Of a stretch of 64,000 nucleotides of DNA, positions 50,701 to 59,130 are shown one piece after another. Made by a program: the position numbers and the translations under genes. How positions within the stretch are numbered: position 1 is the stretch's first letter; every line of letters starts with the position of its first letter. The notes beneath the pieces are model-generated. The model had not been told where the DNA came from. It ran no database searches and was given only the letters and a program-made list of their open reading frames with translations. Source of the DNA: Isurus oxyrinchus (Eukaryota); the NCBI GenBank assembly GCA_026770705.1, contig JANJGN010000071.1, positions 2,356,001-2,420,000 of the forward strand, given 5' to 3'.

Positions 50701-53700
50701 ATAAATATTATATATAAATATTACATAGATTCCATCGAGAAAAATTATATATAAATATTACATAGATTACATCGAGAAAAATTATATATAAATATTACAT
50801 AGATTACATCGAGAAAAAATATATTTAAATGTTACATAGATTACATCGAGAATCACGATAGCTGATTTGTGCAGAGCAAGATCCCACAAACAACAGCGTG
50901 AAATTGAGGTGATAATTGATTATTTTAGTGAGGTTAGTTGATACATTTATATAGAAATTACACATATAATTACACATTTAGTGAGGAAAACCTGTCCATT
51001 TTAACAGGTCTGGGTGTATAAGTGACTCCAGTCTCAAACACCAACATGGTTAACTCTTACCTGCCCTCTGAACTGCTCTCCCAGTTTGGGACAAACCAGT
51101 GGTTCAGGAGGAAGACCCCCCACCACCTTCTCAAGGGGAAACTAGGGATGGACAATAAATGTCAGCATCGCCCGAGAATGAGTATTTAAATACTGAGTGA
51201 GTGTATCGCTTCTCGAGATACATCGGAGCATCATTGTAAACCTGTAGTGCAGTAATTAATGGCTGTTTTTACAGGTAGAGACTCCAGTAAATGGACAGTA
51301 GGATTGTTCACGGCTGGGATCATGTTGAGTGTTTTCCTGGCTGGAATCTTCATCTTCATCTGTGTGAGAAAGTAAGTCTGAAGATTTAACTTGATTTTAA
51401 TATAAACACTTGTTTAGGACTAATTAGACAGTTTTTACAAAGGGCCAGCACAGGCACGATGGGCTGAGTGGCTTCCTCCTGAGCTGTGAGATTTTAAATT
51501 CTTTCATCGCATGTGGCTGTCACTGGCGTGGCCAATACTAATTGCCAATCTCTAATTGGCCCTTGAAAAGGTGGTGGCGAGCTGCCTTCTTGACCCGCTG
51601 CAGTCCATGTGGTGTAGGTACACCCACAGTGCTGTTAGAGAGGGAGCTCCAGGATTTTGACCCAGCGACAGTGAAGGAACGGTGATATATTTCCAAGTCA
51701 GGATGGTGAGTGACTTGGAGGGGAACTTCCAGGTGGTGGTGTTCCCATGTGTCTGCTGCCCTTGTCCTTCTAGATGGTAGAGGTCGTGGGTTTGGAAGGC
51801 GCTGTCGAAGGAGCCTTGCTGAGTTGCTGCAGTGCATCTTGTAGATGGTACACACACTGCTGCCTCTGTGTGTTCGTGGTGGAGGGAGTGAATGTTTAAT
51901 GTGGTGGATGGGGTGTGGATCAATCGAGCTGCTTTGTTGTGGATGGTGTCAAGCTTCTTGATTCTGTGCTTTGTGCAGAAGTGATTTAAAGAGACAGTCC
52001 CAGTCATTGGTGTAAGGTTACAGTGGGCCCTGTGTCTGTGCTGCACTGACTCTCTGCTATGTGATAACCACAGTGTGATATTGTGTTATTGCAGGAGGAA
52101 GACAGTGACGGAGGAGAGAGTTTCAGGGACCAGAGACATTGCATTGACCCCTAGTCCACTCTCTGTGATGCGCAAGGTACAGGAGCTGTTTACACTCACT
52201 CCAAAGCTTCAATCTCAGTGTGTAGACAACAAATATCCCAGATTCCCAGCCCAGTTACCCACTGATTTGTACCTGTGGAGTCAGCAATGGTTCAGTATCA
52301 TTCTGTCTCTCTGTTATGACACAGCAACTGGTAAAGGCTGTTGTTTAAAATCCCAGAGGGAAACTTTAAACAACTGTCATAACCTATATTTCCCAGTGGA
52401 ATGTTTGAGATGCAGCTCTAAATTCAGGAATAAGACCATCAGTTCTCGAGATGGGTTTATATCAAACTAAATGAGACATTTATTAATTTGCACAAGTTAA
52501 ACATATGCACATGGCTACAAACTAGTATTATCATAACTTTTTAACAAATTATCAAACTAATCTCCTCTAATACAACCCATAGACTTTAAGCAGACACCAG
52601 GCAAAGCATTTTCACCTCACAAACTCCAAATGAGGTTCCTTTCACTTTGGTTCCTTTGCAGACAGGTGTAGGCTTACAGCTGCTTTGATGTTACAAGCCT
52701 CTGTTCTGCACACACAAAACTGCTCAAGTTATACCCAGCTCTTCTCTTTGAATGTAAATTCTCATTGTATCATCAGGACCTTTGAACTCCATCTCTTCTA
52801 ACTATAAATCCTCTGTCATAGTATCAATTTTATTAGTAATATAAACGTTGATTGGTTTAAAATTTCACGCTCAGGCCTTGAATGCTCTGTTTAAAAATGC
52901 AAATTGCATCTTTATCCCTCAGTTTACATCTGAAAACTACTATACATCAAAATACCCAGACTGGCTGGCTTTAATCCAATTAAAACACACACAGACTAAA
53001 CCCCTATGCGAATAAAAATAATTTCCAATAACATGATATCCATTGATCGCATCATGACAGTCTCTCTCTCTATCTCTAGCTCGCTTTCTTTCTCTCTCTT
53101 TCTCTCTCTCTCTTCCTCTCTCTGATTACAAGGTCCATGTTATCGAGCCTCTACCAGACACTTGAGTGAAGAATCCAAGCCGTCACTCACCAGAGCCATT
53201 ACCGAGGGAATGCAAGACTGACAGAGGGTCAGTACTGAGGGAGTGCTGCACTGTCGGAGGGTCAGTACTGAGGGAGTGCTGCACTGTCGGAGGGTCAGTA
53301 CTGAGGGAGCGCTGCACTGTCGGAGGGTCAGTACTGAGGGTGTGCAAGACTGACAGAGGGTCAGTAATGAGGGAGTGCGAGACTGACAGAGGGTCACTAT
53401 TGAGGATGTGCTGCACTGTCGGCGGGTCAGTACTGAGGGAGCACTGCACTGCCATAGGTGGTTTCTTTCATAAGACATGGGAGAGAGAGTTAAACCCACT
53501 GAGACACGACTGACATTAACGAAGCTGCACAATAATTTAACCCTATCAGTGCCAGTAAATGATGTGAGGATGTCTTCTGTTTCCATTTCTCTGTAGGGTA
53601 AACAGAACGTGCTGATTACTGAGCCCCGGAACACAACCAGAGCCACAACTAGTGAGGGGGAGACCCCAGCTCCCCGGGGTCTCTCTGAAGGTCCAGTGGG

Positions 53701-57029: not shown

Positions 57030-59130
57030 CAAGGTGAGGTGAGAGTGACTGCCTTTGACATCAAGGCTGCATTTGACCGAGTGTGGCATCTAGGATCCCG
57101 AGCAAAACTGGAGTCAATGGGAATCAGGGGTGGTACGAAAGTATAATAATTTGCTTAATATTTTCCTGGTTTGTTGTAAACTAGGTTTATGGGTGTGAGT
57201 GTCTGTCTGTGTGGTTTAATTACATCTGGAGTCAGGTAGACTGCAAGTTTGAGATTATCAAAAGAAGCTAGGTGTAGAAATGTAATTGAAATGCTAATGA
57301 GTGAACATGGAGGCTGACTTAGCATGTGAGGTGAGAAAGGGAATTTTAATTTTTAGATAAGTGACGGGATTGTTTGGATTTCAAAGGGCTGTTGGTCTGT
57401 TTACAACGAGGCCGATATGCAAGGCAAAGGAGTGTGTTTATTTTTCCCAAAGGTTATTGACAACATTGGCAACATGAAAGTTTTTATATTATGGGAAATG
57501 TATAATTCCCAAGACATTTGGAACAATGAAATTTACATATCAAAGAGAGAGGAACATCAACAAAGGAGAATGAAAGGCTATGTTGGGGATCATGTAAAAT
57601 CTAACAAGAGTGTGTGAATCAGCCTTGAAGAAGCCTCCAGGCATTTGTCCATAGGTCTGTTATGTTCAGTGACTGTCGTTCGAGAAAGCCATTTGGAAAT
57701 CCACTCTCAAGTGTGTTCTGTGTTACGTTGCTGGTTTTGTTTTTAAATCTAAAATCTATTTTGGTTTATTGCCTAAAAGGAGTTTTATTGCTCACTTCCA
57801 GACTTCCCGATGCCTGACCACCATCTTCAAGGTTAATTAGGAAGTTTAGGATTTGTTATAGTAGTAACCGTATCCTTATGTGTGCGCTTTAAATCTTAAA
57901 TAAATATTAAAATTTAATTTTTAAGATCTCTAAATGTCTTGGTTGACACATTACTCCTGAATTCAGTGCACACATCTCATAATAAATACAAATTGCAAAA
58001 CCGTTGTGATAGTGTGACCAAGTTTCCCTTGTGGATTTGGTCCCCCTGGCAAACATCATCTACCACATCATAACAGAGGGAAAACTTTCCACTGGTTGGA
58101 GCCATACCCAGCACAAAGGAAGAGAGTTGAGGTTGTTGGAGGTCAATCATCTCAGTTCCAGGACATCACTGCAGGAGTTACTCAGGGTAGTGTCCAAGGC
58201 CCAACCACCTTCAGCTGCTTCATCAATGACCTTCCTTCCATCATAAGGACAGAAGTGTGGATGTTCACTGATGATTGCACAATGTTCAGCACCATTCACA
58301 GCTCCTCAGATACTGAAGCAGTCCTTGTCCAAATGCAGCAAGACCTGGACAATATCCAGGCTTGGGCTGACAAGTGTCAGGCAATGACCATCTCCAATAA
58401 GAGAGAATCTAGCTATCGCTCCTTGATGTTCAATGACATTACCACTGCTGAATACCCAACTATCAACATCCTGGTGGTTACCATTGACCAGAAATTGTAC
58501 TGGACCAGCCATAAAAATACTGTGGTTTCAAGAGCAGGTCAGAGGCTGGGAATCATGCAGTGAGTAACTCACTCCAGACTCCCCAAAACCTGTCCACCGT
58601 CTTCAAGGCACAGGTCAGGAGTGTGATGGAAGACTCTCCACTTGCCTGGATGAGTGCAGCTCCAACAAGATTCAATAAATTCAACACCACTCAGGACAAA
58701 GCAGCCCCACTAGTTCGGCTCCCCATCCACAAACATTCACTCTCTGCACAACCGACACACAGTAGCAGCAGTGTGTACCAGCTACAAGGTGCACTGCAGG
58801 AACTCACCAAAACTCCTTAGGCAGCACCTTCAAACACACGACCACTACCATCTCAAAGTACAGGTCAGCAGATACATGGTAACACTACCACCTGGAAGTT
58901 ACCCTCCAAGTCACTCACTATCCTGACTTGGAAATATATCGGCCGTTCCTTCACAGTCACTGGGTCCTAATCCTGGAACTCCCTCCCTAACAGCATTGTG
59001 GGTGTACCTACACCACATAGACTGCAACAGTTCAAGAAGGCAGCTCATTACCATATTCTCAAGGGCAGTTAGGGATGGGCAATAATTCTGGCCTCGCCAG
59101 TTCCGTCCACATCCCATAAATGAATATAAA
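57030..59130 (+). mobile_element. LINE ORF2 3' half, interrupted by an LTR-like insert at 57131-58075
   Basis: DIKAAFDRVWH; GVTQGSVQGP..FINDLP..MFTDDC RT motifs; the insert ends CATCATAACA. Confidence 0.8.

What the first reader, a model, noticed from the sequence alone, without database searches (positions are those of the whole stretch)
51480..57030. Duplicated cytoplasmic module gives one TM two alternative tails: signalling-dead versus ITIM+ITSM
Seen: a ~2.97-kb duplication starts about 110 bp after the TM donor (GAGCTGTGAGATTT at 51481 and again at about 54447). It copies both cytoplasmic exons but not the TM. Tail 1 reads FLYANP and TELAQI; tail 2 reads LFYANI and TEYAQI. Both frames and all splice dinucleotides are intact. 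Post-gap sequence continues the gene A-like 3' flank, so the gap probably hides only a microsatellite. Known: MAG has alternative L and S tails. Inference: alternative last-exon choice could switch one ectodomain between decoy/adhesion and SHP-recruiting inhibition.
Basis: partly seen in the sequence, partly recalled or inferred. Interest (0 to 1): 0.8.

Follow-up and report, generated by a model that had tools for sequence, protein, structure and literature searches.

The report
Shark Siglec gene's doubled signalling tail
A shark immune-receptor gene of the Siglec type carries its two inner-tail exons twice in a row, and RNA contigs plus gene models of related sharks show the two copies spliced one after the other, ending in the inhibitory copy, rather than used as either-or endings.

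Summary
A 2.97-kb direct duplication (51480-54446 and 54446-~56860) copies both cytoplasmic exons but not the TM exon. All AG/GT sites and both frames are intact, and the four motifs read as stated.

The either-or interpretation is only partly supported. The first copy's last exon has a GT donor 16 nt before its stop. RNA-type contigs of 3 of 4 runs join 53829 to 55058 in frame, across the assembly gap. Seven predicted proteins of white shark and basking shark have the same serial junction. Three of them carry the same order of module types as here.

Between species the distal halves of the modules are orthologous (34/36 residues), so the duplication is old. Its 95-100% identity over most of the proximal 1.3 kb, and again over the start of the last exon, looks like later homogenisation.

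The TM-to-second-copy junction cannot be told from that of inverted paralog A, whose exons are identical. No transcript ending at tail 1 was seen. Which exon precedes the first copy's last exon in RNA is also not shown.

Either way the product ends in ITIM+ITSM. The gap's DNA stays unresolved.

The scan noted the same layout before on two other pieces of this genome (s1-865407, s1-865411).

The parts
45047..45412 (+). V-set exon of the gene, Siglec type, with YFFRIE
   Evidence: Pfam V-set E 2.5e-11 and Ig_CD22 E 1.2e-08. Best solved relatives are Siglec-5 (1.2e-15), Siglec-7, Siglec-8, MAG and CD33, with YFFR aligned. Exon limits come from tblastn.
46208..46522 (+). First C2-set exon
   Evidence: Pfam C2-set_2 E 6.6e-09. 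tblastn limits.
48880..50363 (+). Two further Ig-like exons, inside the open stretches 48880-49206 and 49992-50363
   Evidence: Pfam Ig_3 E 2.2e-12 and 4.5e-04. The same exon order is found in white-shark model P0027.
51275..51371 (+). The single TM exon. It ends with 2 nt of a codon and its donor is GTAAGT.
   Evidence: Identical 97/97 nt to paralog A's TM exon.
51480..54446 (+). Copy 1 of the duplicated unit
52095..52176 (+). cyt1a exon (82 nt), 8 nt different from cyt1b (6 amino-acid changes, 2 silent)
   Evidence: Contig depth is low or nil in 3 of 4 runs.
53597..53845 (+). cyt2a exon, reading FLYANP and TELAQI, with its stop at 53843-53845. The in-exon donor is CAG|GTTCGA at 53829|53830.
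   Evidence: Joint 53826->55055 (cut +3, GT..AG) in runs X1, X2 and X5.
54029..54162 (.). Assembly gap (N). It lies inside what the RNA joint treats as an intron.
   Evidence: Letters not read or filled.
54327..54440 (+). Poly(A)-like hexamers after tail 1: ATTAAA at 54327-54332 and AGTAAA at 54435-54440. Paralog A has AATAAA at the second place.
   Evidence: Consensus match only; use is not shown.
54446..54447 (+). Junction of copy 1 and copy 2, with 2-nt microhomology (TG). The homology with paralog A also ends here.
54446..56860 (+). Copy 2 of the duplicated unit, with a ~172-nt extra piece at 55707-55878
55058..55139 (+). cyt1b exon, identical 82/82 nt to paralog A's cyt1
   Evidence: It is the acceptor for the joints from 51371 and 53829.
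56593..56841 (+). cyt2b exon, the terminal exon, reading LFYANI (ITIM consensus) and TEYAQI (ITSM consensus)
   Evidence: An X2 contig at 56659-56904 reads through its GT and its stop into the flank.
56867..57034 (+). 3' flank element shared with other Siglec-type genes of the window (39294-39459, 43733-43898, 5068-5231 minus)
   Evidence: Covered by contigs in X1, X2 and X5.
5910..8289 (-). Inverted paralog A with a single tail. TM exon 8193-8289, cyt1 7388-7469, cyt2 5910-6158 (LLYANP and TEYAQI). It has AG|AT, so no GT, at the in-exon donor place. AATAAA lies at 5324-5329.

Best explanation
This is the 3' end of an inhibitory Siglec-type receptor gene of a lamniform-like shark. Its two-exon cytoplasmic module was duplicated in tandem long ago.

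The two modules are used in series. The last exon of module 1 (cyt2a) works as an internal exon, because a GT donor 16 nt before its stop (53829|53830) is spliced to the acceptor of cyt1b (55058). The junction codon AG+G still encodes Arg and the frame runs on into cyt2b. The mRNA ends after cyt2b, so the protein ends in ITIM (LFYANI) plus ITSM (TEYAQI). Module 1 adds about 105 residues upstream, carrying one Tyr (YANP).

Shown here: the duplication, the intact sites and frames, the spliced junction in RNA-type contigs, the same junction in 7 public shark models, and orthology of the distal module halves between species.

Inferred: that the contigs come from this locus; that cyt1a is included here; that the near-identity of the proximal parts comes from gene conversion after the species split; and that the tail recruits SH2 phosphatases.
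For: Splice site and RNA.
- The donor context is CAG|GTTCGA. The exon arithmetic is 233 + 82 = 315 nt = 105 codons.
- The joint 53826->55055 (cut +3, GT..AG) is seen in X1 (depth 5054), X2 (376) and X5 (29), that is 3 of 4 runs, 2 studies and 2 organisms.
- For comparison, TM-exon depth is 5959, 1361 and 64 in the same runs.
- No other-letter row is listed at the Leu codon of cyt2a.
- An X2 contig at 56659-56904 reads through cyt2b's stop. The cyt1b->cyt2b joint is seen in X5.

Public proteins.
- 1 of 12 HMMER hits to cyt2b has two matched stretches.
- 4 of 18 word-search hits cover at least 98% of a TM-plus-double-tail query.
- Of 38 proteins fetched, 7 have two modules, all joined ...AQIR|[RK]K...
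- P0027 (XP_041037239.1, white shark) has the same exon order and the same order of module types as here.

Age of the duplication.
- Distal halves: window module 1 vs P0027 module 1 is 34/36, and module 2 vs module 2 is 34/36. Module 1 vs module 2 is only 21/36 in either species.
- Proximal halves: 40/41 within the window, against 34/41 and 36/41 between species.

Paralog contrast.
- Single-tail paralog A has no GT at that place, and has AATAAA where this gene has AGTAAA.
Against: - No listed joint shows TM->cyt1a or cyt1a->cyt2a. Only 15 of 42 joints are shown.
- The cyt1a bin has depth 0 in X2 and X7, 13.7 in X5 and 1154 in X1. So which exon precedes cyt2a in RNA is not shown.
- TM spliced directly to cyt2a would be out of frame.
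- The runs are labelled 'RNA? (a guess)' and are contigs. They may come from near-identical cassettes elsewhere in this genome (earlier notes s1-865407 and s1-865411).
- X5 and X7 look like another species: TM letter 51307 is C, and the first letter of cyt2b is C.
- The public proteins are automatic models, not cloned cDNAs.
- The donor is weak (6 of 9 consensus positions, judged by eye).
- cyt1a has 6 replacement changes to 2 silent ones, and module 1 lost its second Tyr. Both fit decay as well as function.
Confidence: 0.62

Rival explanations
1. The two modules are mutually exclusive ends. TM->cyt1a->cyt2a with polyadenylation before 55058 gives a motif-less receptor. TM->cyt1b->cyt2b gives the inhibitory one.
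For: - All sites are intact.
- The joint 51371->55058 is seen in X5 and X7, and TM loose ends continue with b-type cyt1 letters in X1 and X2.
- Hexamers ATTAAA (54327) and AGTAAA (54435) lie after tail 1.
- There is a precedent: Siglec-8 short and long forms (PMC7823959, passages seen).
Against: - The TM->cyt1b junction is letter-for-letter that of paralog A, so it proves nothing for this gene.
- No contig shown ends in or covers a tail-1 3' UTR.
- In X2 binned depth falls from 346 to 54.5, to 0 at the gap, and to 1.95 after it, against 1505-1735 over cyt2b and its flank. The tool warns that depth is a weak measure.
- The orthologous module (the ...QVLRMSS... type) is internal in 3 of 3 public proteins that carry it.
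Confidence: 0.13
2. Module 1 is a decaying passenger in this haplotype. It is normally skipped, and the working mRNA is TM->cyt1b->cyt2b. Serial transcripts would then be a by-product, or would come from other copies.
For: - The second Tyr is lost here (Y to L by 2 nt), whereas it is kept in 21 of 22 public YxxP-type modules.
- cyt1a differs at 8 of 82 nt, while the flanking intron in the same 150-column window differs at 2 of 68.
- The cyt1a bin is empty in X2 and X7.
- TM followed by b-type cyt1 is seen in all 4 runs.
Against: - The cyt2a->cyt1b joint has depth comparable to the TM exon in X1 and X2, and no letter differences are listed at the Leu codon.
- cyt2a keeps an open frame, its AG acceptor and its GT donor.
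- The distal half of module 1 is 34/36 identical to the white-shark ortholog.
Confidence: 0.2
3. This is an assembly artefact. The gap marks a misjoin, and copy 2 belongs to another gene with its own ectodomain and TM exon.
For: The gap at 54029-54162 lies between the copies and its length is only an estimate. The cluster is full of near-identical segments.
Against: - Spliced contigs link 53829 to 55058 across the gap in 3 runs.
- Both gap flanks are collinear with paralog A, with 148 against 156 positions between them.
- White-shark models have the same two modules in one protein.
Confidence: 0.03

Closest known systems
Carcharodon carcharias XP_041037239.1 'sialic acid-binding Ig-like lectin 10' (P0027), with XP_041037234.1 (P0016) and XP_041037072.1 (P0028)
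   Same: The exon order is the same: C2, Ig, Ig, TM, cyt1, cyt2, cyt1, cyt2. Module 1 is of the FLYANPQVLRMSS type and module 2 of the YANINFSKL type. The serial junction follows ...AQIR. The distal halves are 34/36 identical to the window's modules.
   Different: These are predicted models of another species. Their module 1 keeps the second Tyr (TEYAQI), while the window has TELAQI. Their proximal halves are less alike (33/41) than the window's (40/41). Their cyt1 in module 1 has the peptide that the window carries in cyt1b.
Human CD33-related Siglecs (Siglec-5, -7, -8, CD33)
   Same: They share a V-set domain with the YFFR-type Arg strand. [quoted passage not shown] The human tail layout is recalled, and is stated for Siglec-8 in PMC7823959.
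   Different: They have one cytoplasmic module, not two in series. Orthology was not tested.
Siglec-8 short/long forms and MAG L/S tails
   Same: One ectodomain gives products with or without tyrosine motifs. For Siglec-8 I saw passages of PMC7823959. The MAG case is recalled only.
   Different: Here the RNA and model evidence is for serial use. A motif-less product has not been seen.
Composite internal/terminal exons such as the immunoglobulin heavy-chain secreted/membrane choice (recalled textbook case)
   Same: A 5' splice site sits inside an exon, upstream of that exon's stop and of poly(A)-like hexamers.
   Different: Use of the poly(A) hexamers after tail 1 is not shown here.

Membership tests
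Siglec family (I-type lectins) | N-terminal V-set Ig domain with the conserved ligand-binding Arg on the F strand | tested here: met
   Pfam V-set E 2.5e-11 and Ig_CD22 E 1.2e-08. The top 18 of 48 PDB sequences are Siglecs or MAG, and YFFRIE aligns to YFFRVE of Siglec-5. That this Arg is the essential one is recalled.
Siglec family (I-type lectins) | C2-set Ig domains followed by one TM segment | tested here: met
   C2-set_2 E 6.6e-09, and Ig_3 E 2.2e-12 and 4.5e-04. The TM exon encodes a 23-residue hydrophobic run (read by eye; no TM predictor was run).
Siglec family (I-type lectins) | Binds sialic acid | not testable with these tools
   Needs a glycan-binding assay.
Inhibitory ITIM/ITSM receptors (CD33-related type tail) | ITIM (I/V/L/S)xYxx(I/V/L) followed by ITSM TxYxx(V/I) | tested here: met
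   cyt2b has LFYANI and TEYAQI. cyt2a has FLYANP and TELAQI and fails both consensuses. The consensus strings are recalled.
Inhibitory ITIM/ITSM receptors (CD33-related type tail) | Phosphotyrosine-dependent recruitment of SHP-1/SHP-2 | not testable with these tools
   Needs a phosphopeptide pull-down.
Genes with alternative last exons (MAG L/S, Siglec-8 S/L type) | Two mutually exclusive 3' ends seen in RNA from one gene | tested here: inconclusive
   The TM->cyt1b joint is present but identical to paralog A's junction. No tail-1-terminated contig is shown. A serial joint, cyt2a->cyt1b, is seen instead.
Composite internal/terminal exon with splice versus poly(A) competition | In-exon 5' splice site upstream of the stop, with a used poly(A) site in the downstream intron | tested here: inconclusive
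   The donor at 53829|53830 is used. The hexamers at 54327 and 54435 are only consensus matches, and contigs cannot show RNA ends.
Two-module (serial tail) shark Siglec-type genes | TM, cyt1, cyt2, cyt1, cyt2 in one reading frame, joined after ...AQIR | tested here: met
   Exon phases fit. The joint is seen in 3 of 4 runs. 7 of 38 fetched public proteins have this layout. Inclusion of cyt1a at this locus is not shown.

The most novel reading that the evidence does not exclude
cyt2a is a composite exon that acts as a switch. Its weak in-exon donor would compete with the weakened poly(A) hexamers after tail 1 (AGTAAA here, where single-tail paralog A has AATAAA). A cell could then choose between a short receptor without ITIM/ITSM and a long inhibitory one, much like the secreted/membrane choice of immunoglobulin heavy chains. 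Gene conversion would keep the proximal parts of the two modules alike, while selection keeps the motif-bearing distal halves apart.
Probability: 0.2. Interest if true: 0.55.

Novelty: new member of a known kind. Interest (0 to 1): 0.3.

Why it matters
It corrects an attractive reading. The gene is best seen as an inhibitory receptor with a lengthened, doubled tail, not as a decoy/inhibitor switch.

It shows that CD33-like ITIM+ITSM Siglec-type tails exist in sharks and have grown by module duplication in lamniform sharks.

It gives a clear local example of concerted evolution that stops in the middle of an exon, leaving the signalling motifs of the two modules distinct.

It also warns that short-read junctions in this cluster cannot be assigned to a gene, because the paralogs share identical exons.

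Tried and rejected
Searches that gave nothing or could not run:
- A word search with the 82-aa cyt2a exon gave no hit. Its length window of 45-143 aa excludes full proteins, so this says nothing.
Their splice sites, junction and poly(A) hexamers remain unchecked.

Readings I rejected:
- A recent duplication. The distal module halves are orthologous between species: 34/36 against 21/36.
- Unequal crossing-over between two copies of the dispersed repeat at the start of each unit. The junction has only 2 nt of microhomology. Paralog A has no repeat copy after its flank. The third repeat copy (58668-59131, minus) aligns only from 51492.
- A retro-copy with 3' transduction. The intron is kept and there is no A-run at 54446.
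- A circular RNA as the source of the backward joint 55139->53598 in X1. The contig has another letter at the first exon place, as in a paralog that starts SKQN (P0033), so a linear paralog transcript is simpler.

Limits of what I used:
- Ranking isoforms by contig depth. The tool says depth is one figure per contig, so I use it only as a weak hint.
- Literature. Four searches listed no paper on shark Siglec tails or doubled tails. For those I saw listings and abstract starts only. The library lacks most subscription journals, so this is not proof of absence.
- No supplementary files were asked for.
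Full report
**What is there**

The window holds a cluster of Siglec-type Ig receptor genes. The gene of the finding is on the + strand.

Its V-set exon (45047-45412) matches Pfam V-set (E 2.5e-11) and Ig_CD22. Its best solved relatives are Siglec-5 (E 1.2e-15), Siglec-7, Siglec-8, MAG and CD33, with YFFRIE aligned to YFFRVE. Three further Ig-like exons match C2-set_2 or Ig_3. After them comes one TM exon (51275-51371).

I searched exon by exon.

**The observation**

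The duplication is real.
- 51480-52743 matches 54446-55706 at 95.25% over 1264 nt (E 0.0).
- 52741-53345 matches 55879-56475 at 83%.
- 53296-53864 matches 56327-56860 at 81%.
- It starts 109 nt after the TM donor.

The TM exon occurs only at 51277-51372 and, in the inverted paralog A, at 8287-8192. The last cytoplasmic exon occurs three times, at 53597, at 56593 and at 6158 on the minus strand.

The exons cyt1a (52095-52176), cyt2a (53597-53845), cyt1b (55058-55139) and cyt2b (56593-56841) all have AG/GT sites and open frames. The motifs read FLYANP and TELAQI in tail 1, and LFYANI and TEYAQI in tail 2.

**The gap, tested first**

The gap's DNA continuity could not be shown.

Three indirect points bear on it.
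- Both flanks are collinear with paralog A. 53369-54028 aligns to 6386-5727, and 54185-54447 aligns to 5578-5317. That leaves 148 nt in A against 156 positions here.
- Spliced contigs join 53829 to 55058 across the gap in 3 runs.
- White-shark models have both modules in one protein, with nothing between them.

So whatever the gap holds behaves as intron. A hidden ectodomain and TM exon is unlikely but not excluded.

cyt2a contains a GT donor (CAG|GTTCGA, 53829|53830) 16 nt before its stop.
- cyt2a up to 53829 is 233 nt and cyt1b is 82 nt, together 105 codons.
- The split codon AG+G still gives Arg.
- cyt1b takes the same phase from cyt2a as it would from the TM exon.

Splicing 53829 to 55058 therefore removes the tail-1 stop and puts module 2 in frame behind module 1.

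**RNA evidence**

The evidence is one lay of 5781 letters on four runs kept as contigs and labelled 'RNA?'. X1 and X2 are one sample of organism A. X5 and X7 are organism B, from two studies.
- The joint 53826->55055 (cut +3, GT..AG) is present in X1 (depth 5054), X2 (376) and X5 (29), and absent in X7. TM-exon depth is 5959, 1361 and 64 in those three runs.
- No other-letter row is listed at the Leu codon of cyt2a, so the contig seems to carry this locus's letters. 29 such rows were not shown.
- An X2 contig at 56659-56904 runs through cyt2b's own GT and stop into the 3' flank, so cyt2b is a terminal exon.
- A cyt1b->cyt2b joint is seen in X5.

**Points against my reading, or left open**

- The joint 51371->55058 (X5, X7) and the loose ends in X1 and X2 show TM followed by b-type cyt1. 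Paralog A's TM exon (97/97 nt) and cyt1 exon (82/82 nt) are identical to TM and cyt1b. These junctions therefore cannot be assigned to either gene.
- No TM->cyt1a or cyt1a->cyt2a joint is among the 15 of 42 joints shown.
- The cyt1a bin has depth 0 (X2, X7), 13.7 (X5) and 1154 (X1). The exon that precedes cyt2a in RNA is thus not shown.
- The contigs could come from a haplotype or paralog whose first cyt1 has b-type letters, as in white-shark P0027.
- Earlier notes say that near-identical cassettes lie on other pieces of this genome.
- X5 and X7 differ from the window at 51307 (giving Leu, as in white-shark proteins) and at the first letter of cyt2b (giving Arg, as in P0016). Organism B is therefore probably another lamniform species. 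Organism A is probably the window's species. This is inference.

**Public proteins**

- HMMER with the cyt2b exon against 1.84 billion representatives gave 12 proteins at E <= 0.001. One of them (P0001, XP_078389619.1, Cetorhinus maximus) had two matched stretches.
- A word search with residues 160-407 of P0001 gave 18 proteins at E <= 1e-10. Four of them cover at least 98% of the query: P0001, P0014, P0015 and P0016.
- With cluster members added, I held 38 proteins. By a motif pattern, 7 have two modules, 25 have one and 6 have none.
- All 7 two-module proteins are joined after ...AQIR, which is the same in-exon donor.
- In all 7, module 1 is of the YxxP type. Module 2 is YxxP type in 4 and YxNI type in 3.
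- P0027 (XP_041037239.1, white shark, 645 aa) has the same exon order as this gene and the same order of module types.
- These are automatic models. Both species are Lamniformes.
- The window is neither species, with 80-96% identity per exon.

**Age and history**

| Pair | Distal half (residues 42-77) | Proximal half (1-41) |
|---|---|---|
| Window module 1 vs P0027 module 1 | 34/36 | 34/41 |
| Window module 2 vs P0027 module 2 | 34/36 | 36/41 |
| Window module 1 vs window module 2 | 21/36 | 40/41 |
| P0027 module 1 vs P0027 module 2 | 21/36 | 33/41 |

- The two-module layout therefore predates the split of the two species.
- The high identity seen here is best explained by later gene conversion. 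It is 95-100% over most of the proximal 1.3 kb, falls to 76-91% in the middle of the cyt1-cyt2 intron, and is 98.7% again over the first half of cyt2.
- The identical stretch ends near 53720/56716. In cyt2, codons 1-41 differ at 1 codon, while codons 42-82 differ at 24 codons (7 silent, 17 replacement).
- The unit junction has 2 nt of microhomology (TG). It lies 7 nt after a hexamer that is AATAAA in paralog A and AGTAAA here. The homology with A ends at the same point.
- Paralog A, which has one tail, has AG|AT and so no GT at the in-exon donor place.

**Motifs**

- YxNI/V plus TEYAxI tails are found in Stegostoma, Scyliorhinus and Mustelus proteins. This type is probably ancestral.
- The YxxP type was seen only in the two lamniforms and in the window.
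- Of 22 public YxxP-type modules, 21 keep the second Tyr.
- The window's TELAQI is a 2-nt codon change, and is the only motif difference from the white-shark ortholog.
- Module 1 keeps one Tyr, in Y-A-N. That Y-x-N is a Grb2-type SH2 consensus is recalled. Calling tail 1 'signalling-dead' is therefore too strong.

**Verdict**

The most likely product is one receptor with both modules in series, ending in ITIM+ITSM (confidence 0.62).

A form that skips module 1 may co-exist, and would also be inhibitory. A form ending at tail 1, which the switch idea needs, was not seen. It stays possible through competition between the weak donor and the hexamers at 54327 and 54435.

Precedents for tails with and without motifs exist, for example the Siglec-8 short and long forms (PMC7823959, passages). 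Four paper searches listed nothing on shark Siglec tails. The layout is, however, already in public automatic annotation, and the scan noted it before on two other pieces of this genome.

Noticed in passing
window 5910-6158 (-) and 5324-5329 (-): Single-tail paralog A has AG|AT, so no GT, at the place of the in-exon donor. It has a canonical AATAAA where the two-module gene has AGTAAA. The two differences go in the direction expected if read-through and splicing are favoured in the two-module gene.
   Followed up: partly
window 56262 (acceptor), joint 55139->56263 in run X1: One X1 contig (depth 156) joins the cyt1b donor to a place just behind a long pyrimidine tract, about 330 nt upstream of cyt2b. 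This may be a minor alternative acceptor. The open stretches there contain stops.
   Followed up: no
window 51275 (loose end in X2); exon ends near 35598, 36551, 46786, 12733(-): X2 contigs put the end of a C2 exon (...GFITITVE) directly before the TM exon. The last letter fits the copies at about 35.6 and 36.5 kb rather than the truncated copies at about 46.8 kb and 12.7 kb. White-shark P0003 has the same join. Ectodomain composition seems to vary by gene or isoform.
   Followed up: partly
window 51492-51965, 54458-54929, 58668-59131 (-), 7614-8072 (-): A dispersed repeat of about 470 nt begins within about 12 nt of the start of each duplicated unit. It has very high contig depth in all runs, so joints inside it are repeat noise.
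   Followed up: partly
window 53153-53487 and 56283-56518; also 25.2-27.5 kb, 39.8-40.9 kb, 44.2-44.8 kb: 33-nt tandem repeats sit in the cyt1-cyt2 intron of both units. They are related to long arrays elsewhere in the window.
   Followed up: no
window 41705-41761, 42622-42999, 45047-45412: A signal-peptide-like exon hit and two V-set exons lie upstream. The gene probably starts near 41.7 kb and has two V domains, as several white-shark models do.
   Followed up: partly
window 55707-55878: Copy 2 has about 172 nt that copy 1 and paralog A lack. This is probably a later insertion.
   Followed up: no
window 60554-64000: A long tandem satellite array runs to the end of the window, with self-matches at 84-88%.
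   Followed up: no
beyond the window's end (earlier notes s1-868596, s1-868640): A hepcidin-type gene lies about 17-21 kb past the window. In human, HAMP lies next to MAG and CD22 (recalled, not checked). The cluster may therefore sit in the region syntenic to MAG/CD22.
   Followed up: no
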